From: Octopus sinensis
Lineage: Eukaryota
Assembly (NCBI RefSeq): GCF_006345805.1
Contig: NC_043008.1
Coordinates: 38,440,001 to 38,504,000, forward strand
DNA: 64,000 bases
Reading direction: 5' to 3'
This document shows, piece after piece, positions 2,459-62,948 of this stretch. Under the pieces are notes generated by a model that had not been told where the DNA came from, made no database searches, and saw nothing but the letters and a program-made list of their open reading frames with translations. The stretch's first letter is position 1, and every line of letters starts with the position of its first letter. Position numbers and translations under genes: made by a program.

Positions 2459-2675
2459 GGGTGGTGAGCTGGAAGAATCATTAACACACCAGACTAAACG
2501 ATTAGCAGCATTATGTCTGTCTTTATGATTTCTGAATTCAAATTTCCCTGAGGTCGACTTTGTTCTTCGTCCATTTCAGTGTCGATAAAATAATTACCAG
2601 TTGCGTACTGAGGTCGATATAACTGACCTGCCTCCTCCGCCAAAATTACTGGTCTTAAACCAAAGTTTGAAGCCA
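2459..2675 (+). mobile_element. tRNA-derived SINE, family B variant
   Basis: Head GGTGGTGAGCTGG and core GAGGTCGACTTTG...GTCGATAAAATAA.TACCAG shared with 18409-18640, but with a different 3' tail (AAAATTACTGGTCTT...TTTGAAGCCA). Confidence 0.75.
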
Positions 2676-4442: not shown

Positions 4443-4471
4443 AATGATGAGGATGATGGTGATGGTGATGG

Positions 4472-4505
<34 letters not shown>

Positions 4506-4578
4506 CATCATCATCATCATCATCATCATCCTTATCATCACCATCATCATCATTATCATCGTCGTCGTCGTCATCATC

Positions 4579-4609
<31 letters not shown>

Positions 4610-4672
4610 TCATCGTCATCGTCATCATCATCATCATCATCATCATTGTCATCATCAATATCATAATCATTG

Positions 4673-4714
<42 letters not shown>

Positions 4715-4730
4715 CCACCATCATCATCAT
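4443..4730. repeat. Compound (GAT)n-(CAT)n triplet microsatellite
   Basis: Direct reading; it explains the poly-M, poly-I, poly-D and poly-H ORFs. Confidence 0.95.
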
Positions 4731-5779
4731 CTGTGTGAGTGATTACTTGGCTTGTGTATCTGCACACTTGTCTGCATGGATGTTTGTGTGAATGCATGCT
4801 CATTTAAGTATGTGTTTGGGCATATTAGATACATGTCTGTGTGTTTGTGTGTGTGTGTATGTGTCTGTGTATCATATAAAATTATCAAACACCAAAACCA
4901 CAGAAAAGAATTGAGGGGAAAAAAAACCCAGTAAATTGCTGTGGTGAGGAGTGATTAAAAAAAATATTGAACATTAAGAGACACAATTAATATTTGTTTC
5001 AATTTGAATAGAATTCTTGACTTTAATTAGTCATTCATTAGCCTTGTGATGACACATGATTGCTAGCCATAGGATTAATTTCCAGCCAAGAATGCCATAA
5101 ACAGAATGTAATTACCAAATTTAAAGTCGAACCCTAGCACACTTTCTTTGCTAAATTATTGTAATCAATGCTGTGACAGAAGCCCTACAGGTGTAACGAA
5201 CAAAATAAATAAATAAGTAAAAATAGAAATAATTAATAAAAAAAATATAAAATAAATATTCTAAAGCGAAACATAAAAGAAAACAAAACAAAAGAATCAA
5301 AGAATTTAGAATGATGGAGAAAATGCTTTCTTGAATAAATTTTATTCAAAGAATTTGTGATCTGTGGTGTGATGTTGTTGTTGTTGCTGTTGTTACCGTT
5401 CTTGTTATTGTTTCAGAATACGAATTCTGACAAGAATCATTTGGAGAAATGTTCATGACTTTAACACTATGGAATATTCCTTCAACCCACAAATGCATCC
5501 ACCCTCCAACCCCTCTTTCTATGTAATTCTCGAATAGTCTTTTATGTAAACAGAATTATGCAACCTCTTTTGTTATATATATGTAAAGGCAAATGGATAA
5601 TAGTGATTATCTATGCATGCATGTTTATTTGAGTGTGTGCATGTTTGTAACTACCGTCAGTTTAAATATATCAGTCTCAGAATATATGCGACAGGGAGAA
5701 GACAGAGAGAAATTCATGTATATATATATATAATACATAGCATGACATAAAATACATACATATACATACATACATACAT

Positions 5780-5835: not shown

Positions 5836-6149
5836 CATACACACACACATATATATATATAAGCACACACATACACATACAGAAATATATCTATATCTAT
5901 ATCTATATATATATATTAATAGTTATCGCCATACTAATATGGCAGTCTTATAAATATAAGACTAAAGCTGTCGCTGATTAGCTCCATGAGGCCATCGCCT
6001 TAAGCTAGCTATTTGACACACAAACTGCGTCCATTATAAACCTTCGAACAAGGGAGGTCAGCTTTTAGAGAGACTTAGTAATTTTAATATTTCTATTTCT
6101 ATTGGCTTGCTGTGTCCCCAAAGCCTGTACTGAGAGTAAAAAACAATAA

Positions 6150-6715
6150 AGCATGCTTGAATTTGTTCAAAAGATTTATAGCCCAATCTTTTCTCTTGTT
6201 CTTGATGGCTTGGGATAAAAATTGGCCTTTTCTGGTCTCAAATGAGGAATATTGTATGTCTTCATGCACTTGCTGTCTAATAAGAAACTTAGGCACTCTT
6301 ATGTCCCTGGAGATCGGCCTGACTGACTTGGAGGGATCGTTGGCAATTGTGGCCTGGATCTCGACAACAAATTCAGGAGTTATTTTCTTATCAGAGTGAG
6401 TTTTCCAAGCTGCCATACCTTTGTATTCACCATTAGACTCATCCAATTCTTTCTGAATCCTCTGCACTGTCGTCATATTGACACCAAATGCTCATACTGG
6501 AGCTTCTGGCATGAATGCCAAGCAGTACAGGATGCTTTTTTTCCATATTTCTGGCAAAGTGAATTGTATTGTGGTGCTGTTTTTCTCACAGAGGGTGTGC
6601 AACTGACCCTACTATACTGTGTAGAAGACAAAATCAAAAACAAACAATGTGCACGCGTGGAAGTAAAAATATAAAATGGAGACAGTTTGCCCATCGCAAA
6701 TAAACACACACAAGT
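6150..6715 (-). mobile_element. 5' half of a Tc1/mariner-superfamily transposase (HTH region, truncated before the DDD domain)
   Basis: ORF 6099-6476 (TVQRIQKELDESNGEY...TPEFVVEIQATIANDPSKSVRPISRDIRV..FLIRQQVHEDIQYSS....KGQFLSQAIKNKRKD....LLNKFKH) matches the N-terminal half of maT/DD37D-like transposases as I recall them. The N-terminus continues frameshifted in ORF 6473-6709. Confidence 0.8.
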
Positions 6716-6990: not shown

Positions 6991-9863
6991 TATATATATA
7001 TGTATATATACATACCTACACACATATATATGATGAGCTTAGTTCATTTTCAACCAAATCTACTCCTAAGGCTTTGGTTGGCTTGGTATGATAAAAACAC
7101 TTGTTCAAGGTCTTTAAATATATATACATATATTATATATATATATACACACACACATATATATGTATATTATAGATATAAACATTTATACATGAGTATA
7201 TATATGCATGAACGTGTGACATGGCAAGCTTGGTATGCTGGTATTTTGGGATTTCTGAAAGATGTAGGTTCTAAATCAAACTGTTTGATCGATGGAGTGA
7301 TACAGCTTCACTGACCAAAAAGGATGTATAAACAAAGAGTTTACTTTGACAGAAGTCAAACTTCAAAATCACAATCTCCAAACTACATATCTCATTAACT
7401 GATTCTGTCAAGTATTGAACCACTGACCTCACCTTTCATTTAATTTAATTTCCTGCTAGATAGACTGAAGCAAGTAGAGTTAGTTCCTGGATCAAAGATC
7501 ATAATACAATGTCTATAGTAAAATAAAAACTCTCCCAAACCATCTACAAAGAGGTGAGCCAAGCCTTTTATTCACACAGAATCTGTGTAACTCTACTATA
7601 ATAGTAATAAAACTTGGCTTAATGGTTGAATGCCTTGTAAAGCTACATTACACCACTGTTTTATCAGATTTCTCACCTACGCCCAACCCTACTCACTTTC
7701 TATTGTTTTAAAGTCAAAGCATGCATCTAATTTGAAGGCACTGGTGTGGTTGCATGCTGTGTTATGTAAATAGAATGTTGATTTTCTTAGATCTATTCAT
7801 GCTTGAACAATCAATAGCACTCAACAGTCTTCATCAGCCTTTGCTTGTGGCTGGCAACTTATTATCATAACACAGTCGTTCACACCACAATATATTTCAT
7901 CCAGGCCACAATAATAAATACATAGCTGCTGTAAACAGTGTGCATGTTGTCAGTTATATATTATAATGACGAGCATAAATTGGTGAGATCTTTCTCTGCG
8001 TGGGAGTTCCAGTGACTCTTGATCATAACTTTATGATGTTCAGACACTGTTGCTTTTGTAAAAATCTGTTGCATAATTATTGCCGAGGAGAATTTAAATG
8101 CATTAATAAAAATTATTGCATATACCACTGCAATTTATGTCAATACTATTCATTTCCTAATGACGTAGAACATAGATGATGTGGATGAGAACTACAAATA
8201 TATCATTAACAATATTGACATAAAAAAACAAACAAAATCAAATACATATGTTCATTATTAGGACATTGCTCTCGGCTATTGGCTAGTGGTCATTTAAGTG
8301 CATTGCTGTTTTCGTGGGTGGAAAAAGTCATTGAGTAAATTTTCATAGAACACTTATTTAATATTTTACATAGTTTTTGCTTATATCAAACAAAAGTACC
8401 GTTAATTATGGCGGCAATTGTTTACAGACTTCACTTGGTGTCTTAAACAATGCAATCACACTTACAGCATTTAAAAATACTTTTTCTTGAGACAAGGAAC
8501 AAAAAAAAAAGGAAAATATGAAATTAAATGTGAAAATACAATGAAAATATATTTGGACAATACCCAATGTAGTAAACTAGTTGTGAGGTTAACAAGTTCA
8601 TTTTGCAACCATATAGCTTCTAACATTCTGTATGGCACATTGGGAAATTGTCTTCTACTAAAACTGCAGGCTGACCATCACTTGTGATTGAAATGTTGGT
8701 AGAGAAAAACTGTACAGAATCTCGCCATCTCTACAAGCATTCATCTATGTGTGCATGTGACTATGACTGGGTTCACTTTTATGTTACATAATGTAGTGGT
8801 TCACAAGTGGAAATCGATAGAATAAGTACCAGACTTTAAAATAGGTACTGACAGCAATTTTATTGATCAAGCCTTTCAAGATGATGCCCCAGTATGGTTG
8901 CAGTCTAATGACTGAAGCTGGTAAATGAATAATAAAATAAAAGTATAAAAGAATATTTGTTACATAAAATAAGGTGACATGGATGGCTAGGTCTATGGGA
9001 GGTGGTACAGTCAGCTGAGAAGTTGACTGTTCATATTTTACTAACTACATAAACTTCTTTGTGCCTACAACTGAAGCTAATACAAAAATAGTCCACTCAT
9101 AGATGCAAAAAGGCATCAGAAAACTATAAAAATTCCTTGCGATAGATAAAAACCACTTGGTAAAATTCACAATTGTTTAAATATATTGTATTTCTGAGTT
9201 CAAATCCTGCCAGGACAGAAAGAGTAAAGAACTTCAGTTTTATCAAAATAGCTAAGTATAATTCTATGAAAATTTATAAATATTAAATGATGAAACAGAA
9301 ACTGATCTGCATATACACCCAGATTTTGTATAGCAAAAAATAATTTAAACACATGATAAAAATAACAAAATTCAGTTTGATAATTCTCCAAACATTTAAA
9401 TTATGTCTTTAACTTTCGAGTCTCATAGAACATATATATCTTCTGAGTTTAAGAAACTTAGCGGAAAATATCTCTGTTGAAATTTAAATTTATCTCAGTT
9501 CAAATTTGACTTTTGTAATTCTTACGACAATGGTATAATTTTTTTTCTCAAGCGGTAACTTTATTTTCTCTCAAGAGGGCTGCTACAAGTTGTTGCTCTA
9601 TGTTCATTCAAGGAATGTTGTATTTCAGTTCTCTGTAGAAATGTCTTTTATTTTGTTCAATAAAGTAAAATTTTACTGTTCTGATTTTATGACATAGTTA
9701 CACATACCTTTATAACTTTTCTCAGTTAATTTAGTATTTCAAATGAAAATAATTAGTTTTGTAACAATTTATTCATGAAACAGCAACTCTAGAGCAATAT
9801 TGTTACAGTAGGCATGTCTTGTTACTATATTTTTATAACCAAAAATATAGGTAAGTTTCATAA

Positions 9864-12104: not shown

Positions 12105-12450
12105 AGCAGAGCGAGAAAGAATGAATGAGAAATTGTATCTAGTACTTTAGCCCTTTAACTGTGAAATTAAATTTTATGGATTAAAATATTCAGAGTCAGT
12201 AATAAAACCATAAATAAAGTACATATAAATGTATATACACACATATATATATTTATGTGTGTGTGTGTGCGTAGGAGTGACTGTGTGGTAAGTAGCTTTC
12301 TTATGAACCACATGGCTCTCGGTTCAGTCCTACTTTGCGACACCTTGGGCAAATGTCTTCTACTATAGTCTTGGGCCGACCAAAGCCTTGTGGGTGGATT
12401 TGGTAGACGGAAACTGAAAGAAGCTCATCGTTTGTATGTATATATATATA

Positions 12451-18408: not shown

Positions 18409-18640
18409 AAGGCGGCGATCTGGCAAAAACATTATCTCCCCGGCTGAAATGCTTAGTGGTATTTCACCTGCCACTATGTTCTGAGTTCAAATTCCACTGA
18501 GGTCGACTTTGCCTTTCATCCTTTTGGGGTTGATTAAATAAGTGCCAGTTATGCACTGGAGTCGATATAATCGACTTAATCCGTTTGTCTGTCCTTGTTT
18601 GTTCTCTCTGTGTTTAGCCCCTTGTGGGTAGTAAAGAAAT
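18409..18640 (+). mobile_element. Full-length SINE family B with TSD
   Basis: Head GGCGGCGATCTGGC, B-box-like GAGTTCAAATTCC, core CTTTGCCTTTCATCCTTT.GGGG; 15-bp TSD AGGTTATTGTATGTT at 18394-18408 and 18641-18655. Confidence 0.92.
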
Positions 18641-20004
18641 AGGTTATTGTATGTTTTCAACATGTCAACCACCACATGTGCCACTGGTGCTTCATTACAG
18701 ACTTCATACAGCCATCATATGCACCATCAGTGGTACATTTTCATAATTTCAGAAGATATGTTATTCTCTATCTTTGACATGGTTTCGAGGATACTTAAAT
18801 AACATGGGTGCTAAATACCGAATTCAAATTTTGGCACAAGGCCGGCAATTTTTGGGTAGGGATAAGTCTATTACATCAAGCCTAGTTCTCAATTGGTACT
18901 TATTTTATCCACCCCAGAAGGAAGAAAAGTAAAGTCGGCCTCGGCAGAATTTGAACTCAAACAAGTGCTAAATATTAAAGTTTAATTATGAAATATTGTA
19001 AAAATGCAAAACAATTCCATTTCCTTGTAATTGAACAATATGCAGTGTGACTGGAAATATGTGGCATCACTGGTAAGTTCCAGAAGCAGGCTGTGGTGGT
19101 CAGCGTGTTAATATGCTTCATGAAATACACTTCCAATAATGCAGGGAACTATGGGAAAGAACAATGTAATAGAGAATTCAATGCTAACAGTTGAAAGGTC
19201 AGCATTTTACTTTACAGTAGGGCATGCACCTATCCCATAGCAATTATTTACATCTTTATTGACTGGAAACATATCAAACCACATACTAATAAGTTTGCTA
19301 AGATCTTCAAAACATGATTTGATGCAAGAATTTTAAATCTTTGACTTTTGAATTTACTATGACCCGAAGTAGATTAACTTTGATCTCTTTGACAAAAGTT
19401 TGCTTGATGCTATTTATTGAAGTAAGTAAAATCTTTGAGGAATTTAATATTATAATAAAGAAAAGATAACAAATTGCATTGAAATAGTTTACAACAATAA
19501 CTACCACCACCATTATCATCAGTATCTCAGCAGTTTTATACCAATTATACATTTTAGATTTTATGAATCTATAATTCATCTCTTTCCTTAGCATGATTAT
19601 GCATAAAAGCCTTCGACCAAGTAAACTGAATTCTGTTCTGAATACTACTCAAAGTTCAATTTATTGAATTCTGCCATACGTACCATTTCAGCAGTGGATA
19701 TTAAACTTTTCAAGCAAACATGTGTCACCCATATTAAAACTATATCTATATTAACTGAGTCATTTTCCCCCACATATATTTAATATACAGTCAATATATT
19801 TAATATACAGTCACTTCCATAGCTCAAGACCAATGTTGTTTTGTAAGTTAGCATTCTACACCCAACAAATAATGTCCTTCTCATTCTACACCAGTTGTTG
19901 TAGATCCTCTGTAGTTATGTCCCATCATAGGAAATATTTGGTAGGTGTACGTCAGACATTTACAAAATAATTAAATTAATGAGATTTTATTTATTAAATA
20001 ATAT

Positions 20005-20385
20005 TGGTTTCAAATTCTCGCACAAGGCCAGTAATTTTGGGGCTGGGTGTTAAGTCGATTATATTGATCCCCAGTACATAACTGGTACTTATTTTATTGA
20101 CTCCAAAAGGAGCAAAGACAAAGATGACCTCGGTGGAATTTGAGACAAAACACCAATTTCTTTACTACCCACAAGGGGCTAAACACAGAGAGGACAAACA
20201 AGGACAGACAAATGGATTAAGTCGGTTATATCGACCCCAGTGCGTAACTGGTAATTATTTAATCGACCCCAAAAGGATGAAAGGCAAAGTTGACCTCAGC
20301 GGAATTTGAACTCAGAACGTAGTGGCAGACAAGATACCGTTAAGCATTTCACCCAGCATACTAACAATTCTGCAAGTTAGCTGCC
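20005..20385 (-). mobile_element. Two stacked family B SINEs (variant 3' part 20005-20147; full copy about 20153-20385)
   Basis: Reverse-complement matches to 2459-2675 and 18409-18640. Confidence 0.8.
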
Positions 20386-20517
20386 TTTTTTTAATTAAAT
20401 AATATTAAATTATCTCTAGCAGAACCAATATCTCTCTGCTGTGTCTTTATGGTTTATTCTCTGTGAATCTTTGATGTTATAACCAGATATATTTTGTCAG
20501 CTAACCTACACAACAAC

Positions 20518-23236: not shown

Positions 23237-23413
23237 CACATACATATATATGATGGGCTTCTTTCAGTTTCCGTTTACCAAATCCACTCACAAGGCTTTG
23301 GTTGGCCCAAGGCTATAGTAGAAGACACTTGCCCAAGGTGCCACGCAGTAGGACTGAAACTAGAACCATATGGTTGGTAAGCAAGCTACTTACCACACAG
23401 CCACTCCTATGCC
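22946..23413 (-). mobile_element. SINE family A, full length
   Basis: Reverse-complement match over head, microsatellite and tail. Confidence 0.92.
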
Positions 23414-24669
23414 TTAATAAAAAGTGACTTCAAAGTTTTATAAGCTATAGCTTGAATAATCATACCTATATTTACCTACTCTCATGAGTTTTATAACCTG
23501 TTCTGCATTTGATGTACTACTGTTATTTTCATTTCTATGCTATGAAATTCAGGAGTAAGTTAATCTAGAAGAACCATTCCTCTTCATTCCATTGTTAAAG
23601 AAACATTCATCAATTTTACTGTGTTTCTTTAAAACAGACAGCTACACTACCTTGAGATACATACCTATACACAATCAAGTGAAGAAGATGGCCTTTCAAA
23701 ATTAATTGTCTTTCTCACAGGAATTAATTGTTTATCCCATGGCTAAAATGTACAGAAATGCCTGGTTGTCTGAGTCTCTTTAATATCTTAAGCAAATAAA
23801 CAATAACATTCTTGGAAGTATGATGCTATGTTGTTGAATAAAATTTATAACCTAACATCAGAGATCGGTAAGCAAGAACCATGTTCAAGATCAGATTACA
23901 AGTAAAATGAATCATCAACAAAACTTCATATGCCTCAAGGGGGGAAAGTGTTGATATGACAAAAATTCTAATCTGTAGAGACTGTGATATAATTACAAAA
24001 CATTTCAACTTTTAGCTGACTTCAAAAATAAGATAGCTTTATAAGTAACATTCTAAAAGAAGAAACAATTACCATATCAGAAATTATATTCATGCAGGTT
24101 CACACATATTCTTATAGCTTGGAATTGCAAAAGCACAAAGAGAAAACGCGAAGAAGAAAACAATACAGAATACAGATAACAAATGGCATTTGTTAGAAAC
24201 TTCAGTGTTAAGTTTTCAAGTCTAAAAAGAAGAATTTAATTGCTATAAAATGGGAAAATATACGATGAAAATCAAAACAAAAAAAAAAAGGAAATATTAA
24301 AATAAAGCTGAGAAAGAAGATCCTAATTGTATTTGTAATTGGTTTGTTTATCATTGCATGAAATGATTTATACATTTGCTTGTTTCAACATTAAGCTCTT
24401 CTCTTTCCTTTCAACAATCTCATGCTTGCAATGAGGTGCTAGTTTTCTTGTTCATTTACTAACTTTTATCAAATATTTATTTTCCCTTTCTATGTGTTTA
24501 ATTAGTAAGAATTCAATTGCTTGTATATAGTTAGAATTTCCTAAATGCAAGTATGTGTGCATGTATACACCCCTACATAAGTATGTGTGCATGTCTGTGT
24601 ATATATATGTCTATGTATACATACATATACATACACACATACACACACGCATCTCTCTCTCTCTCTCTC

Positions 24670-27344: not shown

Positions 27345-27734
27345 AGTGGTTGTGTGGTAAGTAGCTTGCTTACCAACCTCATGGTTCTGGGTTCAGTCCC
27401 ACTGCATGGCACCTTGAGCAAGTGTCTTCCAATATAGCCTCAAGCCGACCAAAGCCTTGTGAGTGGATTTGGTAGATGGAAACTGAAAGAAGCCCATCGT
27501 ATATATGTATATATATATGTGAGTGTGTAGGTTTGTGTGTCTGTTTGTCCCCCCAACATCGCTTGACAACCAATGCTGGAGTGTTTATGTCCCTGTAACT
27601 TAGCGGTTCAGCAAAAGAGACTGATAGAATAAGTACTAGGCTTCTAAAGAATAAGTCCTGGAGTTGATTTGCTTGACTAAAGGTAGTGCTTCAGCATGGC
27701 CACAGTCAAATGACTGAAACAAGTAAAAGAGTAA
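27345..27734 (+). mobile_element. SINE family A
   Basis: Match to other family A copies. Confidence 0.9.
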
Positions 27735-27813: not shown

Positions 27814-28023
27814 CCTTTCTAATATAGACGCAAGGCCTGGAATTTGGTGGAGGAAGATAAGTCGATTACATCAACTCCCAGTACTCCACTGGTAATTATT
27901 TCATTGACCCTGAAAGGATGGAAAGCAAAGTTGATCTTGCTGGGATTTGAACTTGGAACATAAAGACAAACGAAATGCTGCTAAGTATTTTTCCCATCAT
28001 GTTAACAGTTCTGCCAGTTCACC
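27814..28023 (-). mobile_element. SINE family B variant; more decayed family B fragments follow to about 28620
   Basis: Core GACCCTGAAAGGATGGAAAGCAAAGTTGA...GATTTGAAC in reverse orientation. Confidence 0.7.
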
Positions 28024-29610
28024 TGAATAACAACAACAACAACAACAATAATAATGGTTTCTGATTTAGACAGATGGTTAATAACTTTGGTGGGATAGTG
28101 GTTAGTTAATGCCATCGACCCCAGTTCTATATTGTTTGTTTTTATGTTGTCAACCCCTAAATAACTCAAAGTCAAAGTTGTCCTTGGTAAGATTTGAACT
28201 CAGAATGTCAAGAGCCAAAACAAATACTGTAAAGTCTATTTTTTATCTGATACTCTAACAATTCTGACAAATCCTCAAACTGGAAACCTGGATTAAATGC
28301 TAGCAATAGAGAAGACTCTGCTAAAGTGCCAGCCAGATGAAGGCATTAAATCAGGTAAAAGATTAAGTTCATTATCCAAGTAAGCTAAGGCAGGATTTGA
28401 ACTCAGAATGTGAAATGCCAAAGGAAATTCCACAATTGTAATAATCTTAAAGTTCTGTCAGTCCACCATCTTGGATTGGTACTTTTTTTTCTATCAACCC
28501 TGAAATGATGAAAGGCGAATTTGACCTCAGTGGGGTTTGATCTCAGGGCACTGAGAGTTGGAACAAAAACTGTGAGGCATTCAATCCAATGTTCTCATGA
28601 TAGTGCCAATTTGCTGCCTAAGTGGATCAAAAGTGAAGCAGCTTCATTAATTTAAGATGAGTGGAAATCATAAATTTAAACAATGCAGTAACATTGTTGA
28701 GTGTTTAATAGAATTTGGTTTTGTTGGATTTTCTCCAGGTCTAATTGATTACAAGATATCCACTCCAATATCTCACAGCCATTTCTGCTGTTGAAACTGT
28801 TGAATTAATGATCTTTAATTAGTCTAATTGCAGGGTTATTAACCTAATTAAAAACTAACTAGCTGTTTGATTATTGATCAGTCACAGAAGCCTAGTATAT
28901 TCATTTTCAATATGGTCTTAAGAAATGTAGGAAGTTCTTTGTTTCCATGTAACCACTTTGTCTTCAAGAAAGTCTTATAGTGTTTAATCTTATTTTGTTT
29001 GTTCATTTGCTTCTTTACTTTTGTTAATTTTAATCCTATGCTATTTCACTTGAATTTTAATGCAGAATATCTCTTTTACATTTATAAAATCAATTGTCAT
29101 ATCTTTACTTTTTGATCAAAATATCTCTATCCTTTACTAATCTTGCTAACTTTTAGCAGCTCTGCACTGTCTCCTGCTTTATGTAAAAGTAATCACGCAA
29201 ACATTTCTGATTATGTTCCCATTCTATCAACAGTCAAAACTGGCACCTTTAAAGTCTCTATTGCAAAGTTGTACAATCTTAATATCTACCACTAAGGCTG
29301 GATGAAGGTATTAGCAGTTGGGCTGTCATGCAGGGTACTTTGTTGTATGGGGTGCAATATCATATGTTTGGGATCTTTGAAAATGTGAAGGGGAAAATAT
29401 GAAAATTGTCATTAAAATACACATTTTATTCTTTTATTTAATAAAAATTAATTATTAAAATAAAATCAAAAATATATTTATTTCCCATAATTAAGATGAA
29501 AACCTCTTAATATTTACTTTGATTCACAAAGTTCCAAGTACTTATTTACAGTTCCTATTTCTCATGGTATCATAAATATGTTGATGGAACTACAGTATTC
29601 TTGTCTTCTA

Positions 29611-30070: not shown

Positions 30071-30213
30071 TGGGCTTCTTTCAGTTTCTGTCTACTCACA
30101 TGGGTTTGGTCAGCCCAAGGCTATAATAGAAGACACTTGCCCTAGGTGCCATGTGGAACTCAGAACTATGTGGTTGGTAAGCAAGCTACTTACCACACAG
30201 TCACTCCTGCACC
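29611..30213 (-). mobile_element. SINE family A interrupted by a 183-bp insert (29835-30017) in its (TA)n
   Basis: 3' half at 29611-29834 and 5' half at about 30068-30213. Confidence 0.85.
29888..29925 (+). ncRNA. Minimal HHR-like motif with a non-canonical core (Penelope-like insert family)
   Basis: TTTTT-CTGTCAA-A-GAGC(GTAG)GCTC-GAA-ACGT-A-AAAG; same insert family as 41650-41817. Confidence 0.45.
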
Positions 30214-31429
30214 TATGGTTATTAATAGGAAATATTTTTGAATGACTTTCGTATGAATATGACCCCAATGAGCTACCATACATGTTATATAATGAACAAG
30301 AAAAGAGACAGTTTTACATGCCATCATCATAAAATGTTCATTGTCTGGCATTGGAGACTAAGTGTTATGTACTTGTTGGTTTACTCAGCAATGTCTTTAC
30401 TCACAATACTTGTCATTTGACTTTACATCAGTTCATTTCCCCTTAAGAAACCAACATTAATTAATATTTTCCAATGATGCAAACAATTTATTATTTTCTT
30501 GTGTTCCATATTATTTATTAGGAATCATTTATCTATATATTTATTTCTTCTGTGTTTACAGTTTTTTGCATAACTGCTTTCTATTTTTTCCTCACATATG
30601 TACATACATGCAAGCACAAATATTCAAATATATATTATTTATCACTGAACAAATAAAAAGTACTGCATAAAATGTCTGCTAGAAAGTGTCTGCTTATATA
30701 TGTCAATAAAAACAAATAGACTATTAAATGTAAGCAGGTAGAAAAGAAACGGTTGAGCAGTCACAGTATTAGAAATCAACTCAGGGTATATGAATTCAAA
30801 GCAATATTCAAAGCAGGTATTTCATTACATCTTTAGCCAAAAACGATTTATTCTGTGTACCTTCGTTGATTCAGCTGTTGAGAATAGAAACCAAAACTTC
30901 CAAGAAAGGTTAGCAAAATATCCACGAACTGATTAGGCTTTTGTTTGAAAAGCCTTTAGAAACCAGATTAGGTACCAAGTCAAGAGATTCCTGAATTCTG
31001 TGAAAAGATTAAGTTTTTAAAGAACAATTCTATATTCAAATTACTGTACCCTGTATGACATGATATTTAAGTGTTACATTTTTTTGGTACATAATATGGG
31101 GGTTTCTTGTGCCTTGTTTGTATTGTAAAGATATATCAACAATTTCTTAGGGAGTTTAACTTGTGATTATAAGATCAGGGGTTCAATTCCTAGTCCAGGT
31201 AATATATTGTGTCCTTGAATCTGCATATGAACAGTTCTTCTCCAAGGTGCAGAACTGGGCAAAGGTTTTATGAAAGACCAGCAGTTTTCTATTTTCTGTT
31301 CTGTTCTTCTACACAGCTATGCCCAGCCATAGAAAACCTGTTTCAATGAATTCCATCTAACTCATGCAAACATGGAAAAGACAGACGTTCGAATGGATGT
31401 GAAAATGATGACGGCAATGAGACAACAAC

Positions 31430-32884: not shown

Positions 32885-33420
32885 ACAAGTATATCCCTGT
32901 TGGGAGAATGTCTTGTTTGCTGTAGATTTTCTACAGATGCAGGGACAGAAAGGGTTGAAGCCACTGGTTGCTGGATCAGATGCTTCTGTTCACCAGAGCT
33001 CCATTAGCTGGGTGTGGCCAGAACAATCCACCTTGGGTGGTCCTACCAGAAACAGAAGTCTCCGATGGCATAGCTCTGACACTCCCATTTCACCCTCTTA
33101 CCAGAATGAGGAGGGGTTGGACTTTAGGGGACAATGGGGCAATTGCCTCAGCTCCCCTTCAGGGTTGGCGAAAGCGATGTGGTGGACAACGAAAAACCTG
33201 GCTGATGACAGTCAAGGCTGATCTGGAACCCAACCTAGGCCCCCATGTCTACAGCGTTCGCCGCTGGAATAAGGAGTGGTGGGAGATCACGAGGTCATTA
33301 ACCTCAGACCGCCAGGCTTGGTCGGCATTTGTGAGAGATGCAGCATTGAGGATGAATGAAGCCAGCTCAACCCAGCCCAGGCAAATGCTGTCTAAAGACA
33401 AGAAGAAGACGAAAATAAGA
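32885..33420 (+). mobile_element. RTE-clade LINE 3' fragment
   Basis: ORF 32968-33513 contains GWRKRCGGQRKTWLMTVKADLEPNLGPHVYSVRRWNKEWWEI...DRQAWSAFVRDA...ASSTQP, matching the C-terminus of flatworm-type RTE ORF2 as I recall it. SLRWH lies in the overlapping frame and an (AAG) tail follows. Confidence 0.8.
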
Positions 33421-33660
33421 CGTTACAGGGCAATTTGCAGAGTACGAAATGAAACAGCTATTTCTATACTAAAAATGAATATAGTTACAAATGAAGATGG
33501 AGAAGTAGTGTAAGATAAACAGTTACATATATGTAATGTAGTTTATATATATGTTGTAAGTTAGGAATGGTCTGTGTTAGTAATAATCTTATTAACCTCT
33601 CGGCTATATATTTGTCTTCATAACAACAGTGTTTCGTTTATTAACAAGTCTTGACCAAAA

Positions 33661-33691: not shown

Positions 33692-33850
33692 CCACCACCA
33701 CCACCATCACCATCACCATCATCATCATCATCATCATCATGCTCCGTCATTAAAGTCATTGTCCTCATGATTATCACTGTCAATGTCGTTGTTGTCATCG
33801 CCATCATCATTATTATCATCGTCATCATCATCTTCATAATTATCATTCTC

Positions 33851-34012
33851 ACGGGCTTCTTTCAGTTTCCGTCTACCAAATCCACTCACAAGGCTTTGGT
33901 CAGCCCGGGGCTATAGTAGAAGACACTTGCCCAAGGTGCCATGCAGTGGGACTGAACCCGGAGCCATGTGGTTCGTAAGCAAGCTACTTACCACACAGCC
34001 ACTCCTATGCCT
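33851..34012 (-). mobile_element. SINE family A, 5' half
   Basis: Near-consensus head; abuts the (CAT)n tract at 33664-33850. Confidence 0.9.
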
Positions 34013-35118
34013 ATGCAAATTACACCTTTTGTGTGACTGGTGATACTTCGTTTGCAATCAGTGTTCACATATTAAGACATATTAAGAAACCTGCACATAC
34101 TTTCTCAGAGGAATGTAAGCAAATGACACCATTTATATGAACGGTGGTATTTTATTTGCAGTCAGTGTATACATAAAATATGTCCAGATGTCAGAATATG
34201 CTTTGGCAGAAAACTGCAAAGAAACAGCATTGTATAAATGGTGATACATTGTTTATTATATTTCGTTTTTGGATTTGGTTTGCAAGATTCTTTATATGAG
34301 TTCGCGTGTTGAAGCATATTCTGTTGAAGCATATTCAAGACTATTAAAAAGGTTGCAAGACACAATGAAAATTTTAGGAAAATAAAAATAAGAAATAAGT
34401 AGAAATTTTACCGGTGAGTGTGTTACATTATAAGGCACAAAAAGAAAATGACTCTCCCCAGACACAACAGAATTGTTTATTATCATATACGAAAATACGA
34501 AATCTCAGAAAATTTCCAGTTTCTTGAGAAAAAGAAAAAAGACAAACAAACAAGACTTAATTTCCACACCAACAAATCTTTCTGCAATATAGGTATAAAT
34601 TCCATTAAATGTATCCCTTGTTAAATTGTGGGTAATAACAATAGCTCAAACATTTATTCTAAAGCAAAAATACAACCAAATAAAATTAAAAGAAAACAAA
34701 ATGAAATATAAGAAAATAAGGTAAATAAGAAATATATATTTTTTTTTTAAAGAGGCAAGTCAAGCAACCGGCATGAAGGAAGTATATGTATGGCTTACAG
34801 AATTGGTATCCTTGAAATGAAAATATACCGAAAAAGAACAGCATCATAAGAACACTACAATCTGGGCTGTTTAAGAAAGAAATTTAGAATGTCACTGCAA
34901 TTTCCATTTAAGAGAGTTCGCATATTGATTTGCTTCAGTGTGTATGTTTGTGTGTATGAGTGTGTGGTGTATGCATCTGTGCAGGCATGTGCAGATGTGT
35001 AGTAAGTCTTGTTATCAAATCTATGTGGCGACAGTGGCCTGTTTAAGGAATTGTATTACAGTCTGTGTGTTGCTAGTGTGAACATAGTGTAAGTTTCTGT
35101 TTGCACACCTAACATGTG

Positions 35119-44426: not shown

Positions 44427-44660
44427 ACCTATTTCTTTACTAGCCACAAGGGACTAAACACAGAGAGGACAAACAAGGACATACAAACGGATTAAGTTGA
44501 TTATATCGACCCCAGTGTGTAACTGGTACTTATTTAATCGACCCCGAAAGGATGAATGGCAAAGTCAACCTTGGTGGAATTTGAACTCAGAACATAGCAG
44601 CAGATGAAATACTTCTAAGCATTTCGCCCGGCATGCTAACGATTCTGCCAGCTCGCAACC
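44427..44660 (-). mobile_element. SINE family B, full length
   Basis: Reverse-complement match to 18409-18640. Confidence 0.9.
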
Positions 44661-45775
44661 TACCAGTAAGATACTTGTGCCCTCCAGCTATCGCATACTG
44701 AATGTGCCATTTGAGCAAGGATGGTGGGGTTGTGAGAGGTGTATGTCTACTTGTGACTACATAGACACCTGAATCAATTTATGACAGCATAGTACATGTA
44801 ACCAAGGGTTACTCATCAATGAATGACATTTCATGCTCATCATGGTCAACAAGTTCACAACCTAAACACTTGTCATGCTGTCTCATCATTGAATTAATAA
44901 ATTGATTGATTGATAAATGAATTAATTAATTACTGGTGTAATATATCTATAACTGCTAAAACTATTTTCTTGAACAGTAGCACTACTATTGCGGTATTAG
45001 AAAAGTTACAGTTCTTTTATTCTAATATTATTCTCATGAGTAAATTTGGAATCTAAATTGTTATTGTGAATTCATAGCGATAATAAAGAGAAAAACAAAA
45101 AAAAGCTATAATTTAGGAGATGCCAAAACACAGCTTTGAATGTTGTCTATGTAGGTTAGAATCTATTACTTTTGATCAATATGAATATAAAATTTACATA
45201 TAAGTTGAAAAAAAAAATTTTTATTGCATTTGATATATCAGAATAAAGATAGCCATCTTGAGAATATATATAAAAAAATATTTTGAATACAAAGAGTTCT
45301 TTTTTCTTTTTCATAACTCAAAGATGTCAAACTGAGATAATAGGTCTGAGATATTACAAATATTTTCTGGGCCATAACTAAGATTTCTACTTTTTGGTCA
45401 ATATTTTAATCTTTTCTTCTCTCTTCCATTTTTTTTTTCACAACTAATATCCCCACGTTCACTGCATTCCTCACCCCACCCATTGCATTAAAATTCTTTT
45501 ATTTGTCTTCAAAATATTTCATAGCTTCCCATCTAAATAAAATCAAATCATCAAAGGCTGAAAATATATATATAAGTTGGGACAATGCTATTACGAAAAA
45601 CATTTTAGAGAACCATTGTAAAACTAACTATTTACATTTTACTTATGTTGTTTTTTACTGTGTATGTATATACATGCATACATGTGTGTGTGTGTGTATA
45701 GAAAGATAGAGAGAAAGAGATGCATAGATAGATAGATTTATGTGTAAATATGTGTCCGCATGTATGTGCATCTCT

Positions 45776-48872: not shown

Positions 48873-48920
<48 letters not shown>

Positions 48921-48942
48921 ATGTGAGTGTGTATGTATGTGT

Positions 48943-48974
<32 letters not shown>

Positions 48975-49009
48975 ATGAGATATTCAAAGCAATAGAAGAG
49001 CATTGAAGA

Positions 49010-49115
49010 GTACTAACCATGGCGGTACATATTCTAAAATTGGAATGATACAGAGAAGATTAGCATGACCCCTGCGCAAGGAAGACATGCAAATTCGTGA
49101 AGCATTCAATATTTT
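49010..49115 (+). pseudogene. RNU6: Full-length U6 snRNA retrocopy (5' part of a U6-SINE chimera)
   Basis: 106 nt, with 5' stem GTACT...GGTAC, the ACAGAGA box, the AGC triad and an ATATTTT end. About 7 substitutions versus canonical U6 in the last 85 nt, 3 of them CpG decay. No PSE/TATA upstream (only a GT microsatellite and the TSD). Confidence 0.95.
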
Positions 49116-49118
49116 CTA

Positions 49119-49351
49119 AAGGCAGCGAGCTGGCAGAAACGTTAGCAATCCGGGCGAAATGCTTAGTGGTATTTCATCTGTCTTTATGTTCTGAGTTCAA
49201 ATTCCACCAAGGTTGCCTTTGCCTTCCATCCTTTCGGGGTCGATAAAATATGTACCATTTACGCACTGGGGTCGATATAATCGACTTAATCCATTTGTCT
49301 GTCCTTGTTTGTCCCCTCTGTGTGTAGCCACTTGTGGACAATAAAGAAATA
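49119..49351 (+). mobile_element. Full-length SINE family B (3' part of the U6-SINE chimera)
   Basis: Matches 18409-18640 end to end. TSD AGAAGAGCATTGAA at 48994-49007 and 49352-49365 encloses both U6 and the SINE. Confidence 0.92.
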
Positions 49352-49649
49352 AGAAGAGCATTGAATAATTCTGTCTGTTTGTCTATCTATCTATCTACTG
49401 AGCCATCTATCTATTTATTTGTGTGTGTATACATATACCCACATGCATATATATGTACATATATATACATGTTTGAGAATATATCCATCATAAATGTACA
49501 AATTCTATAAATGTACAAATTCTATAAATGTACAAATTCTATATTCTGCGTAAAAGAGAAAGAAGTTTATTTTTGGACATTGCTGAAATTAATAAATTTG
49601 CAAAACAAACCAAGAAACAAACAGAAAGCAGAGAAACCAGGAAGCTAAG

Positions 49650-50157: not shown

Positions 50158-50224
50158 GTGACCATCATCATCATCATCGTCATCATCATCATCATCATCA
50201 TCATCATCGTCATCGTCATCATCG

Positions 50225-50258
<34 letters not shown>

Positions 50259-54249: not shown

Positions 54250-55814
54250 CATACATACATACTTAGATACATACATACATGTGTGCATAAATATATACAT
54301 ACAAGCATACATACATACATACATACATACATACATACACACACACACATACTCATATATAAATTCACACACACACTTACACACATGAGAGAAAGGAGGA
54401 ATGGGAAGATTCAGTGTTGTAACACCATGTTTGAAATAAGCAGTTTTGAAAGAATTCATGAACTCAACAGGTAAGATAATGGAGTAACTTATGGTAGACA
54501 CTAAACAATGGTAGTAGCAGAGAGTTACTAGTGTTCACTAAGATAAAATACTAAACATCTTCTACTTATTGCAAGGAAAATTTACCAACATTGAACCAGT
54601 TACCTATATACGGTATCTAAAACTTGAAGAAATACTATCAGTATTTTTGAAGTTTCGTTGGATCAGCTAATTTTTAATTAATTAAATTAATTATACTACA
54701 GTGCAGTAGTTATCTAAAGTTAACTAAGATTGTTGCTAAATGACTATCGCTAAATTTTTGGAATATGGTAATCATTAGTGGATCAGATCAAGTTTACTAA
54801 TTTGGTTGAATTACTTTAATTAAAAAAAGTTGTAATTAGATTTTGGACTGCTTTGTAAAATTATATTACTATTTTGTTATTTATTTTGTACAGTTTGTGT
54901 GTGTTTCTGACGCTGTTCTGCATTATGAGTTGTAATATGGTGAAGTAAGAAGCACAGTCTATGAACAGACTTAGTAAATTGACAGATCAAATGTCATGTA
55001 GTACTTAGCTATACGAGAGGGTTAGTGGGCAGATTCAGTGGCACATGAAGACAAAATGTGAGCGGCATTTCTTCCATATCTTAACTTACTCAGTTCAAAT
55101 CCTACCAAGATCAACTTTGGCTTTTACCCTTTTGGTATTGACATAATAAAGTAGAAATCAAGTACATGGAGTGATTTGATCAGCTTGTGGTCCTCCCTAC
55201 AAAAATTGCTGCCCTTCAACTCTGCAACTGGTCGGTGTCCTGTTTAGTGGGGGGATGTTGGGATCTTGACCACTTAAATGCCATAAAAACAAGGTAAGCA
55301 GCTTTTTGAATTCAAATATTAAAAAATTAAAAAGTATTTAGCTATGTACTTTTATGTTTTAAGTTCAATCCGACTGAGACCTTTACTTTTGGTCTTTAGG
55401 GAGAGCAGTTTTAAATTGCAAAGGAAATGACCTGAAAGATTACCAGAAATCAACAAACTTAATAGAGGGATTTTGAGATTAAAAGCTCAGGACTACCCAC
55501 TGCATGCTTTTATTTATAATAGTCTTATCTCTTAGAAGAGAAATTTATGCTTATGACACTATTATGGGGCCTCGGAAATCAGAGGAAGGTGCAGAGGGGG
55601 TAGCAACATCTCCTTAAACCAGACACCTGACTTCTGAATGCTTTTTTAAAAGAGTGAACTCAAATAAAGGCACCCAGCATTGGAGTTAAACTGAACAACA
55701 GATTAATCTACCCATCTCTGCCCCCCCCCCATGTAGTTCATGGTAGGATTTGAACACAGAATGCAAAGAGCCAGAAAAAATACCACAAAGCTCTAATGTT
55801 TCTACTATTTTTTA

Positions 55815-56185
55815 TCTTTTACTTGTTTGAAGCATTAGGTTGTGGCCATACTGGAGCACCTTCTTGAAGAAATTTTGGTGGAATGGATTGTCTTCAGTGC
55901 TTTTTTTTTAAGCCTGGTACTTATTTTATCAGTCTGTTTTGTTGAACTGCTAAGTTACAGGAATGTATGCACTGCAACACTAGTTGTCAAATGGTGATGG
56001 AAGACAAACCAGACACAAACACACACACACACACATATATGTATGACAGGCTTCTCTCAGTTTCCATCTATCAAATCCACTCACAGAGCTTTGGTCAACC
56101 CAAGGCTATATTAGTGACCACTTTCCCAAGGGGTCATGCAGTAGGACTGAACCAAGAACTACATATTTGGGAAGTAAACTTCTTG
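55815..56185 (-). mobile_element. SINE family A, decayed
   Basis: Reverse-complement similarity to family A. Confidence 0.75.
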
Positions 56186-60023: not shown

Positions 60024-60394
60024 TATATATATATCATGTATATATGTGTATATATGTATGTATGAGTCTACATAAATAGTGAGAAAGAGAAATATTGGTG
60101 GACATAGATAGTGAGATAGATAGATAAATATCATCATTGTCGTGATATTTATATATTTATGTCCAGATTTTCCACGCAGATAAGAGTTGGGTGAAACTAC
60201 TTGAGGCAGTATTCAATGGCCCGATGCCATTCTTCATGCCAAATATTACTTGTTTCTTCCGAGTAAACTACTTTATTCCATATCCCTGCATGTTGGAACC
60301 ACTGTCAGCTATTTTGTTTATGGGAGACATAAATAAAACCCACTGCCAAAGTGTTGTCAAGCAAAGGCATGGATATACGGATACAGATGTATGT

Positions 60395-60778
60395 GCACAC
60401 ACACACACACACACACATACGCGCACACACACACATACACACACACACAACCACACATACACACACAACCACACACACACACAACCACACACACACGCAC
60501 ACAACCACACACACACAACCACACACACACACAACCACACACACACACACAACCACACACACACACAAACCACACACACACAACCCACACACACACACAC
60601 AACCACACCACACACACAACCACACACACACACACAACCACACACACACACAACCACACACACACAACCACACACACACACACAACCACACACACACACA
60701 CAACCACACACACACACAACCACACACACACAACCACACACACACACACACACACACACACAACCACACACACACACA
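60395..60778. repeat. Compound (CA)n / AACC(AC)n repeat
   Basis: Direct reading; it explains the HT/CV-rich ORFs. Confidence 0.95.
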
Positions 60779-61172
60779 TGTGATTATGCATGCATGTATG
60801 TATGTATGTATCTGTGTGTATGAAGGCATGTATGTATATAAATATAAGCTTGTTTAAACCATGAAAATGTACAAATTTTAAGATGTAAAATAAATCATTC
60901 TTAGGAAGAGCCTTGGAGTAAGGACGGCTTATAAAAGACAGTACGTAATATATTCGGTTTAAAATCTCTTGGATGGGAAAAAAAGGTCAAAGGCTACGTA
61001 TGGAAATTGAACCCACAATTTGCTCTCAATCATTTACCAACCAAAGGGGCTTTTAGCCCAATATATAACAAGCTATTATTCATACCTGTATCCATATCAA
61101 CATTCTCTGTACATATACATATATTTATATATATACATGCATGCATACATACAAAATATATAATATACGTAC

Positions 61173-61647: not shown

Positions 61648-61809
61648 GGTGCAGGAGTGGCTGTGTGGTAAGTAGCTTGCTTTCCAACCACATGGTTCCA
61701 GGTTCATTCTCACTGCATGGCACCTTGGGCAAGTATCTTCTGCTATAGCCTTGGGCTGACCAAAGCCTTGTTAGTGGATTTGGTAGACGGAAACTGAAAG
61801 AAGCCCATC

Positions 61810-62076: not shown

Positions 62077-62528
62077 ATATATAAGCAATATATGTAAGTG
62101 CATTTAGTTTTAGAAGAGTGGTAATTCAGTGCTTGAGTAGATATATTGAAGAATCACGCAATCTCTATTTGGAAGAGTATAATTTAAATTGTAGCAACTA
62201 GAAACCTTTGCTTTCACACCATTTTCTCATTTAGGTGTTGACATCTAATATATATTGCTTCATATGCACAATTTCGAACATATGCACAATTAGAAAATGG
62301 TGATGATGATGACGACGATGACGACAATGTTGCTGATGATGATGACAACGAGGATGGCAACGGCAATGATGATGATGGGGATAATTAAAGAAAGACTGAA
62401 GGACTAACACAAATAAATAAAGAAAGAAAGAAGGAAAGAAAAGAAAGGACACTTCACTGTATATAAATCTGTAAGTTCTGCCTGTATATGAAAAATATTA
62501 TCCATCACACCGTTAATAATTTTACATT

Positions 62529-62948
62529 GGCGTAGGTGTGGCTGTGTGGTCAGTAGCTTGCTTATGAACCACATTGTTCTGGGTTCAGTACCACTGCATG
62601 GCACCTAGGGCAAGTGTCTTCTACTAAAGCTTTGGGCCAACCAAAGCCTTGTGAGTGGATTTGGTAGATGGAAACTGAAAGAAGCCCGTCATATATATGT
62701 ATATATGTGTGTGTATGTGTGACTGTGTCTGTGTTTGTCCCCCATCCCCACTCCAACATCGCTTGACAACCAATGCTGGTGTGTTTACGTCTTCGTAACT
62801 TAGCAGTTTGGCAAAAGAGAACCGATAGAATAAGTACTAGGCTTACAAAGAATAATTCTTGGCGTCGATTTGCTCGGCTAAAGGCGGTGCTCCAGCATGG
62901 CAACAGTCACATGACTGAAACAAGTAAAAGAGTAAAAGACTAAAAGAT
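62529..62948 (+). mobile_element. SINE family A, full length
   Basis: Same structure as 61648-62076, with a (GTAAAAGA)-type repeated tail. Confidence 0.92.

What the first reader, a model, noticed from the sequence alone, without database searches (positions are those of the whole stretch)
48994..49365. Full-length U6 snRNA-SINE chimeric retrocopy in a single target-site duplication
Seen: TSD(14) + GA + complete U6 ending in four T + CTA + complete family B SINE + TSD(14), all co-oriented. Known: U6/L1 chimeras in mammals have been attributed to template switching or to RtcB ligation of the U6 2',3'-cyclic phosphate to a 5'-OH RNA. Inference: the same fusion route operates in this mollusc with a tRNA-derived SINE and a non-L1 LINE (RTE or CR1-like) machinery. 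I am not aware of this being reported in cephalopods.
Basis: partly seen in the sequence, partly recalled or inferred. Interest (0 to 1): 0.8.

Follow-up and report, generated by a model that had tools for sequence, protein, structure and literature searches.

The report
U6–SINE chimeric retrocopy in octopus
A dead copy of the U6 spliceosomal RNA fused head-to-tail to a complete octopus SINE was pasted into the genome in a single retrotransposition event; this kind of fusion is already known in vertebrates and is seen here in a mollusc.

Summary
The layout is: 14-bp direct repeat AGAAGAGCATTGAA (48994-49007), GA, full-length U6 (49010-49115, Rfam 100.7 bits, ends TTTT), CTA, a complete 233-nt SINE (49119-49351), then the same 14-mer (49352-49365). 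All parts are co-oriented.

- The 14-mer occurs nowhere else in the window.
- Neither U6 nor the SINE has a duplication of its own.
- Another copy of the same SINE (18409-18641) has the same ends and a 14-15-bp duplication.
- U6 has no promoter context and is mutated at invariant positions. It is about as decayed (~8%) as the SINE (~7%).

A single LINE-mediated insertion of a U6-SINE fusion is therefore well supported. The complete SINE and the 2-3 filler bases favour an end-to-end template jump over RtcB-type ligation, but one locus cannot decide this.

SINE-derived protein matches are all Octopus. One O. bimaculoides protein (A0A0L8IBN2) reads as U6 3' end plus SINE head with a different junction, which suggests the fusion recurs.

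The novelty claim is overstated. Doucet et al. 2015 already described U6 chimeras with non-L1 LINEs and with SINEs (platypus Mon-1, AnolisSINE2) inside duplications. The "tRNA-derived" origin and the LINE partner remain unproven. No empty site could be fetched.

The parts
48994..49007 (+). 5' copy of the target-site duplication AGAAGAGCATTGAA
   Evidence: Exact 14-mer, found only here and at 49352 in the whole window (D5).
49008..49009 (+). GA: either two extra (non-templated) bases at the 5' junction, or the end of a 16-bp duplication with one later mismatch (GA vs TA)
   Evidence: Sequence. D5 extends to 21 nt at 86% identity.
49010..49115 (+). Full-length U6 snRNA retrocopy (pseudogene) ending in TTTT
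   Evidence: Rfam RF00026, 100.7 bits, model 1-105/105, 5' stem-loop paired. There are 7 substitutions in the 87-nt core relative to canonical U6. Three are CpG transitions and one is U74>A. Upstream is (TA)n(TG)n microsatellite, with no TATA box at -30.
49116..49118 (+). Junction filler CTA (2-4 nt, depending on the true SINE 5' end)
   Evidence: Not part of the U6 model. Not part of the SINE as defined by seven related copies, which start [A/T]AGG.
49119..49351 (+).
   Evidence: Aligns over positions 1-233 with copies at 18409-18641, 20156-20388 and 44430-44661. It is 7.1% from the 4-copy consensus. Translated frames match Octopus bimaculoides and O. vulgaris proteins.
49352..49365 (+). 3' copy of the target-site duplication AGAAGAGCATTGAA
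   Evidence: Starts immediately after the SINE's last base, the same end as copy 18409.

Best explanation
This is a fossil of one target-primed reverse transcription event. It is not a gene.

Inferred steps:
1. A SINE RNA was bound through its 3' tail by the reverse transcriptase of an unidentified, non-poly(A) ('stringent'-type) LINE.
2. The endonuclease nicked the bottom strand at CAAT|AGAAG, and the SINE was copied from ...GAAATA to its 5' end.
3. The enzyme added 2-3 untemplated bases and jumped end to end onto the 3' oligo-U end of a U6 snRNA.
4. It copied U6 to its first base, plus 0-2 extra bases.
5. The cDNA was joined after a top-strand nick 14 bp downstream. This gave the 14-bp duplication.

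Shown directly:
- one duplication flanks the whole unit;
- both parts are full length and co-oriented;
- the U6 part has no promoter context and is mutated;
- both parts have since decayed by about 7-8%.
For: - One TSD encloses both parts and is unique in the window. There is no TSD around U6 alone or the SINE alone.
- The same SINE elsewhere has identical ends and a 14-15-bp TSD, so 14 bp is what this machinery produces.
- U6 is complete from model position 1 to the T-run.
- The SINE begins within 1-2 nt of the family's 5' end.
- The two halves show similar decay. The SINE is 7.1% from its consensus. The U6 core has 7 of 87 differences, including CpG transitions and loss of invariant bases.
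- The SINE has no A-tail. U6 alone could therefore not be mobilised by such a LINE and needs a SINE or LINE 3' end. This is the pattern Doucet et al. found for stringent LINEs: chimeras only.
- Template jump versus ligation: RtcB products are U6(T4-8) joined directly to variably 5'-truncated partners (PMC6789731). Here the partner is complete and filler bases are present, as expected when a reverse transcriptase runs off the end of one template. End-to-end jumping with untemplated additions was described for R2 (Bibillo & Eickbush 2004, cited; the details are from my own knowledge).
- Recurrence: O. bimaculoides protein A0A0L8IBN2 (P0007) reads ITRKFVKRSI, matching the canonical U6 3' part MTRKFVKRSI at 9 of 10 residues. 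It is followed by a different junction and then the SINE head. The junction codons differ more than the flanks (7/18 vs 20/138 minimum nucleotide differences, p=0.018).
Against: - Only one locus is seen at the DNA level.
- No empty site or orthologue could be retrieved.
- No LINE partner was identified.
- CTA could be a few bases of 5' leader from the SINE's source locus rather than untemplated addition.
- A full-length partner in a single case does not exclude ligation.
- P0007 is known only as a protein, with no DNA and no TSD. It keeps the same codon spacing between U6 'SI' and SINE 'LAE' as the window copy, which a shared origin would also explain.
Confidence: 0.6

Rival explanations
1. 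RNA ligation before retrotransposition. The 2',3'-cyclic phosphate end of mature U6 was joined by an RtcB-type ligase to a SINE RNA with a 5'-OH. The fused RNA was then inserted as one template.
For: This is demonstrated for human U6/L1 and U6/GFP RNAs. The products end in about 4 T, as here (PMC6789731). It gives the same single-TSD anatomy.
Against: Ligation partners are broken RNAs with variable 5' truncation and direct junctions. Here the SINE is complete to within 1-2 nt, and 2-3 bases lie between the two parts. A primary Pol III SINE transcript carries a 5'-triphosphate, which is not an RtcB substrate (established biochemistry, my knowledge).
Confidence: 0.2
2. Co-transcript from a single source. 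Either a real U6 gene with a leaky T4 terminator has a SINE 3 bp downstream, or an older chimera acts as master copy. Either would produce U6-CTA-SINE read-through RNA, which the LINE machinery inserts via the SINE tail.
For: - Only four T end the U6.
- The SINE body contains no T4 run, so Pol III could read through it.
- SINEs are dense here, about 20 copies in 64 kb.
- P0007 keeps the same U6-to-SINE codon spacing.
Against: - A same-orientation, full-length SINE would have to sit within a few bp of a U6 terminator. From the window's SINE density this is roughly 3e-4 per U6 gene.
- P0007's junction residues differ at all six codons, significantly more than the flanks.
- The natural reading of P0007 is a longer T-run plus a 3-nt deletion in the SINE head. 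That makes it a different junction.
Confidence: 0.12
3. Two sequential insertions. Either U6 was inserted at the edge of an existing SINE, or the SINE was inserted at the edge of an existing U6 retrocopy.
For: SINE density is high, and nested or adjacent SINEs exist in the window (20050-20388).
Against: - The second insertion would have made its own ~14-bp duplication. None exists around either part.
- A third copy of the 14-mer between the parts is absent.
- U6 has no tail that this LINE type could use on its own.
- Both parts show the same level of decay.
Confidence: 0.04

Closest known systems
U6-SINE and U6-LINE chimeric pseudogenes made by non-L1 LINEs in platypus (L2, Mon-1) and Anolis (L2, RTE, AnolisSINE2): 'Group IV' of Doucet et al. 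2015 (PMC4476161)
   Same: U6 lies 5' of, and in sense with, a SINE whose tail belongs to a stringent, non-poly(A) LINE. The whole unit is flanked by one TSD. No U6-poly(A) form is expected.
   Different: The taxon is a cephalopod mollusc rather than a vertebrate. U6 is full length here, whereas most platypus copies are 5'-truncated. The TSD is 14 bp, whereas platypus L2 gives 1-9 bp. The LINE partner is unidentified.
Mammalian U6/L1 chimeras (Buzdin 2002/2003; Garcia-Perez 2007; Moldovan 2019, PMC6789731)
   Same: A full-length U6 ending in a short T-run is fused in sense to a retroelement 3' part, inside a 6-19-bp TSD.
   Different: The partner here is a complete SINE without poly(A), not a 5'-truncated L1. 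Filler bases lie at the junction. No L1-type TT/AAAA target is evident.
Magnaporthe grisea WEIRD-MgSINE/MGL chimeras (Gogvadze 2007, PMC2104539)
   Same: A small non-coding RNA is fused to a SINE inside 12-14-bp direct repeats. This is attributed to LINE template switching outside mammals.
   Different: The 5' partner there is WEIRD RNA, not U6. The SINE there is 5'-truncated.
SINEU: crocodilian SINEs with U1/U2 snRNA-derived heads (Kojima 2015, PMC4494074)
   Same: An snRNA sequence is added to the 5' end of a SINE, probably by template switching.
   Different: SINEU elements are amplified families with shared junctions. Here there is only one DNA copy, plus one protein-level relative with a different junction. 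Amplification is not shown.

Membership tests
U6 chimeric retropseudogene (U6 + retroelement in one TSD) | U6 sequence 5' of, and in the same orientation as, the retroelement | tested here: met
   U6 at 49010-49115 (+) and SINE at 49119-49351 (+).
U6 chimeric retropseudogene (U6 + retroelement in one TSD) | U6 3' end intact, with the oligo-T run joined to the partner | tested here: met
   Rfam model matched to position 105/105. The U6 ends ATATTTT, then CTA, then the SINE.
U6 chimeric retropseudogene (U6 + retroelement in one TSD) | Partner ends at its native 3' end, where reverse transcription starts | tested here: met
   The SINE ends ...AAAGAAATA exactly as copies 18409 and 44430 do.
U6 chimeric retropseudogene (U6 + retroelement in one TSD) | One TSD around the whole unit and none around either part | tested here: met
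   14/14 exact and unique in the window. The parts alone show at most 6 nt, off register.
U6 chimeric retropseudogene (U6 + retroelement in one TSD) | Empty pre-integration site with a single copy of the duplicated sequence in a related genome or allele | not testable with these tools
   No cephalopod DNA is present in the scannable collections. Flanking ORFs are not on record.
U6 chimeric retropseudogene (U6 + retroelement in one TSD) | Recurrence: other independent U6-retroelement junctions in the same lineage | tested here: inconclusive
   O. bimaculoides A0A0L8IBN2 (P0007) reads as U6 3' end, a different junction, then the SINE head. It is known only as a protein, with no DNA and no TSD. 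P0006 is a weaker candidate.
Functional U6 snRNA gene | Upstream Pol III type-3 promoter (TATA at about -30, PSE) and conserved catalytic nucleotides | tested here: not met
   Upstream is microsatellite followed by the TSD. Substitutions hit invariant positions, including AACG>AATG, GGCC>GACC and U74>A. The promoter was judged by eye only.
tRNA-derived SINE | Head recognisable as tRNA-related | tested here: inconclusive
   No ARAGORN or Rfam tRNA hit in any copy. A poor cloverleaf appears only at an 80% threshold on a CpG-restored consensus. A box-B-like GAGTTCAAATTCC is present (by eye).
tRNA-derived SINE | Short, multi-copy, dispersed, with TSDs | tested here: met
   Four full copies plus at least six head-sharing relatives in 64 kb. 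Copy 18409 has a 14-15-bp TSD.
tRNA-derived SINE | 3' tail shared with a partner LINE | not testable with these tools
   No LINE with this tail is in the window, and no genome is available.
RtcB-ligated U6 chimeric RNA product | U6(Tn) joined directly, without filler, to a partner RNA broken at a variable internal position | tested here: inconclusive
   There are 2-3 bases between the parts, and the partner is complete, unlike the products in PMC6789731. However, n=1, and the filler could belong to the SINE transcript.
snRNA-headed SINE family (SINEU-like) | Many copies sharing one snRNA-SINE junction | tested here: inconclusive
   One DNA copy in the window. U6 occurs once. The only other candidate, P0007, has a divergent junction.

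The most novel reading that the evidence does not exclude
U6-SINE fusions are not one-off accidents in Octopus. They would be a recurrent product of the resident stringent-type LINE reverse transcriptase jumping from the 5' end of SINE RNA onto U6. At least one such fusion may have become a propagating U6-headed composite SINE. This would extend snRNA-headed SINE birth (SINEU-like) to U6 and to lophotrochozoans, in a genome whose SINE expansion is a hallmark.
Probability: 0.12. Interest if true: 0.55.

Novelty: new member of a known kind. Interest (0 to 1): 0.3.

Why it matters
It adds a lophotrochozoan example to a process documented in mammals, platypus, lizard and a fungus: LINE reverse transcriptases joining a small nuclear RNA to a retroelement in one insertion. 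That supports the view that such RNA-level recombination is a general property of non-LTR retrotransposition and a route by which SINEs acquire new 5' modules.

Octopus genomes are unusually SINE-rich. An RTE-class LINE is reported as expressed in the octopus brain (PMC9115989). A census of such chimeras could therefore serve as a marker of which LINE/SINE pairs were active and when.

By itself this locus is a neutral, decayed pseudogene with no expected function.

Tried and rejected
- **Public DNA scans.** I scanned for the U6-SINE junction pattern and for SINE-specific words in metagenome, GTDB genome and viral contigs. All gave 0 hits. These collections hold no cephalopod DNA, so no genome-wide census or empty site was possible.
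- **Orthologous locus via flanking or overlapping ORFs.**
  - The 174-aa ORF downstream gave no exact record and no homologues.
  - The 49-aa junction ORF and the 58-aa 3'-flank ORF gave no record.
  - P0001 gave no record.
  - Proteins returned only by the representative search (P0002-P0011) were not handed to the look-up of encoding contigs, because that tool restricts its inputs.
- **LINE partner.** A LINE-like C-terminal ORF (32968-33513) has no homologues and no useful Pfam match. Its 3' region does not resemble the SINE tail.
- **tRNA origin of the SINE.** It was not detected and is only marginal on a restored consensus.
- **Other small-RNA retrocopies in the window.** There are none. 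The 225 sub-threshold Rfam hits are microsatellite artefacts.
- **Full-text search for SINE sequence strings.** No papers were found.
- **Rejected: a functional U6 gene.** There is no promoter, and invariant bases are mutated.
- **Rejected: chance direct repeat.**
- **Rejected: sequential insertions.**
- **Left open: CORE-SINE relationship.** A resemblance of the SINE core to CORE-SINEs (octopus OR1/OR2 are CORE-SINEs according to PMC4758252 and PMC4824008) rests on my memory of the MIR core. It was not tested.

Full report
**Observation**

The region reads, on the + strand:
- AGAAGAGCATTGAA (48994-49007)
- GA (49008-49009)
- a 106-nt U6 (49010-49115)
- CTA (49116-49118)
- a 233-nt SINE (49119-49351)
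- AGAAGAGCATTGAA (49352-49365)

Rfam places U6 (RF00026) at 49010-49116 with 100.7 bits against a gathering score of 44 (E=5.7e-25). Model positions 1-105 of 105 are matched, the hit is not truncated, and the 5' stem-loop is paired. It is the only Rfam match above threshold in the 64 kb. A permissive scan adds only microsatellite artefacts, and ARAGORN finds no tRNA.

The 14-mer and all its 10- and 12-mers occur only at these two places. The repeat finder reports the pair independently as D5. Given the window's composition (A+T 68%), a second copy at one register has probability 6.6e-9. An empirical control of 20,000 random position pairs at the same spacing, with ±10/30-nt slack, found non-simple exact repeats of at least 14 nt only at this locus and in one TA-rich microsatellite.

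**The SINE and its limits**

The 233-nt element is a real dispersed repeat. Three more full-length copies lie at 18409-18641 (+), 20156-20388 (-) and 44430-44661 (-). They are 83-88% identical pairwise. At least six further copies share the head and core (positions ~9-170) but carry other tails.

Copy 18409 is flanked by its own 14-15-bp direct repeat (A)GGTTATTGTATGTT. It has exactly the same element ends, AAGGC...AAAGAAATA. So the SINE in the finding is complete at both ends, and a 14-bp duplication is what this element's machinery makes.

Across seven related copies the 5' end reads [A/T]AGG(C/T). Octopus proteins containing the translated head mostly begin (K)G(S/G)ELAE. The filler between U6 and the SINE is therefore 2-4 nt. 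The SINE has no A-tail or simple-repeat tail. No LINE sharing its 3' end is present in the window.

There is no hit with ARAGORN or the Rfam tRNA model in any copy at E<=10. Only a poor cloverleaf appears, at a relaxed threshold, on a CpG-restored consensus.

**One event or two**

U6 taken alone, and the SINE taken alone, have no flanking direct repeat. The best matches are 6 nt and out of register. There is no third copy of the 14-mer between the parts. Either order of sequential insertion would have produced one or the other.

U6 sits behind a (TA)20(TG)n microsatellite and the duplication, with nothing resembling a TATA box at -30 (judged by eye). It differs from canonical U6 at 7 of 87 core positions. 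These include three CpG transitions, GGCC>GACC, and the internal-stem-loop bulge U74>A (the reference sequence is from memory and agrees with the Rfam consensus at upper-case positions).

That ~8% decay matches the SINE half, which is 7.1% from the 4-copy consensus. The SINE figure is an underestimate, because CpG sites have decayed in all copies.

The 5' stem-loop differs from human U6 at 8 of 19 positions but keeps its pairing. This looks like a lineage-specific U6 variant rather than decay.

A single insertion of a fused U6-SINE template is the parsimonious reading.

**Mechanism**

Three routes could make the fused template:
1. a jump of the reverse transcriptase from the 5' end of the SINE RNA to the 3' end of U6;
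2. RtcB-type ligation of U6>p to a 5'-OH RNA before retrotransposition;
3. read-through from a U6 gene, or an older chimera, with a SINE just downstream.

Moldovan et al. describe ligation products as U6 ending in ~4-8 T joined directly to variably 5'-truncated partners (PMC6789731). Here the partner is complete to within 1-2 nt, and extra bases sit at both junctions (CTA, and possibly GA). This is the signature of a polymerase running off a template end and adding untemplated bases. End-to-end jumping was described for R2 by Bibillo & Eickbush 2004, which is cited in the papers read; the mechanistic details are from my own knowledge. I therefore favour the template jump, but with n=1 this is inference.

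Because the SINE lacks poly(A), its LINE is of the 'stringent' type. U6 could only be mobilised by borrowing a SINE or LINE tail. Doucet et al. reported exactly this pattern for L2 and RTE genomes.

**Evidence from outside the window**

None of the scannable DNA collections contain cephalopod sequence. Flanking ORFs gave nothing.

Translated SINE frames did hit:
- The consensus frame -2 matches UniRef A0A0L8H450_OCTBM from Octopus bimaculoides (86% identity, E=2e-18).
- The open frame that runs from the U6 3' half across the junction into the SINE head (49064-49243) found nine proteins. Five carry names, all O. bimaculoides or O. vulgaris. The other four are unnamed Logan entries. This fixes the taxon.

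One of the nine, A0A0L8IBN2_OCTBM (P0007, 54 aa), begins MITRKFVKRSILFLDGDLAESL... Residues 2-11 match the translation of the canonical U6 3' part (MTRKFVKRSI) at 9 of 10 positions. The SINE head follows immediately.

P0007 retains the CpG-intact U6 codons that are decayed in the window copy. Its six junction codons all differ from the window's. The minimum is 7/18 nucleotide differences against 20/138 in the flanking U6 and SINE codons (Fisher p=0.018). The natural reading is a longer T-run plus a 3-nt deletion in the SINE head. That points to a second, independent U6-SINE fusion with a complete SINE head. It favours a recurrent process over a single read-through source.

The evidence is protein-level only, with no contig on record and no TSD. 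The equal codon spacing leaves a shared origin possible. P0006 (Logan) may be a third, heavily decayed case, but its U6 part is not significant.

**Comparison with what is known**

Doucet et al. 2015 (PMC4476161, section 10) already reported:
- U6 chimeras with L2 and the SINE Mon-1 in platypus;
- U6 chimeras with L1-, L2- and RTE-like LINEs in Anolis;
- six U6 chimeras with AnolisSINE2.

These were flanked by TSDs where they could be assessed. The authors concluded that template switching to U6 is a general property of non-LTR retrotransposons. Gogvadze et al. 2007 described small-RNA/SINE/LINE chimeras with 12-14-bp repeats in a fungus. Kojima 2015 described SINE families with U1/U2 heads born this way.

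I found no paper in the searchable library reporting U6 chimeras in cephalopods or other invertebrate animals. This is absence in that library, not proof of absence.

Octopus is reported to have an expressed RTE-class LINE (PMC9115989). Nothing here ties this SINE to it.

**Verdict**

The mechanism is probably an end-to-end template jump, with ligation and read-through as live rivals. This is a new taxonomic instance, possibly recurrent in Octopus, of an already described kind of retrocopy. It has no expected function. Interest is modest. A genome-wide census in Octopus assemblies would be easy and would settle mechanism, recurrence and the LINE partner.

Noticed in passing
33849-34058(-), 23255-23414(-), 61653-61806(+), 62521-62689(+), 27345-27495(+), 12269-12424(+), 1393-1540(-), 30072-30217(-), 56046-56153(-), 8628-8712(+): A second, more abundant SINE family has about 10 copies in the window (GGAGTGGCTGTGTGGTAAGTAGC...GGGTTCAGTCCC...GAAACTGAAAGAAGCCCG). 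Several copies are followed by TA/TG microsatellite. None is adjacent to a small-RNA retrocopy.
   Followed up: partly
27858-28020(-), 2466-2627(+), 20050-20143(-), 18863-18967(-), 28477-28619(-), 55054-55186(+): These copies share the head and core (positions ~9-170) of the 'family B' SINE but have different 3' tails. This is a modular SINE superfamily with exchanged tails. It includes an adjacent or nested pair at 20050-20388.
   Followed up: partly
49236-49249 and 49268-49281 (and the same positions in the other copies): The SINE body contains an internal 14-nt direct repeat, GGGGTCGATAAAAT / GGGGTCGATATAAT, with copies 32 nt apart. This suggests an old internal duplication in the core (D8).
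   Followed up: no
SINE positions ~86-100, e.g. 49205-49216: Window copies read CACCAAGGTTGA ('HQG*'), whereas Octopus protein hits read the equivalent of CGCCGAGGTCGA ('RRGR'). Pervasive CpG decay means the 4-copy consensus underestimates the age of these SINEs.
   Followed up: partly
48978-48993 vs 49341-49351: The 5' flank just before the duplication (AAAGCAAT) resembles the SINE's own 3' end (AAAGAAATA). Copy 18409 shows no such resemblance, so this is probably chance. It could hint at a target preference.
   Followed up: partly
whole window, e.g. 48875-48977, 4291-4803, 50163-50258, 60191-60857: Microsatellite density is extreme: (TA)n, (TG)n, (ATC)n and (CAT)32. This creates most of the long 'ORFs' and 225 sub-threshold Rfam miRNA matches, all of which are artefacts.
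   Followed up: yes
49490-49543: A perfect 17-nt tandem repeat, ATAAATGTACAAATTCT x3.2, lies 125 bp downstream of the insertion.
   Followed up: no
6099-6476(-) and 32968-33513(+): A degenerate Tc1/mariner-like HTH ORF matches Pfam PF01498 at E=0.017, below the family cutoff. A LINE-like C-terminal ORF has no database homologues.
   Followed up: partly
outside the window: proteins P0002-P0005, P0011 (Octopus vulgaris / O. bimaculoides annotations): Several annotated Octopus 'proteins' have C-terminal or internal stretches that are simply this SINE head translated in frame. One example is the C-terminus of an MFS-domain protein, A0A0L8H654. These are SINE exonisation or annotation artefacts.
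   Followed up: no
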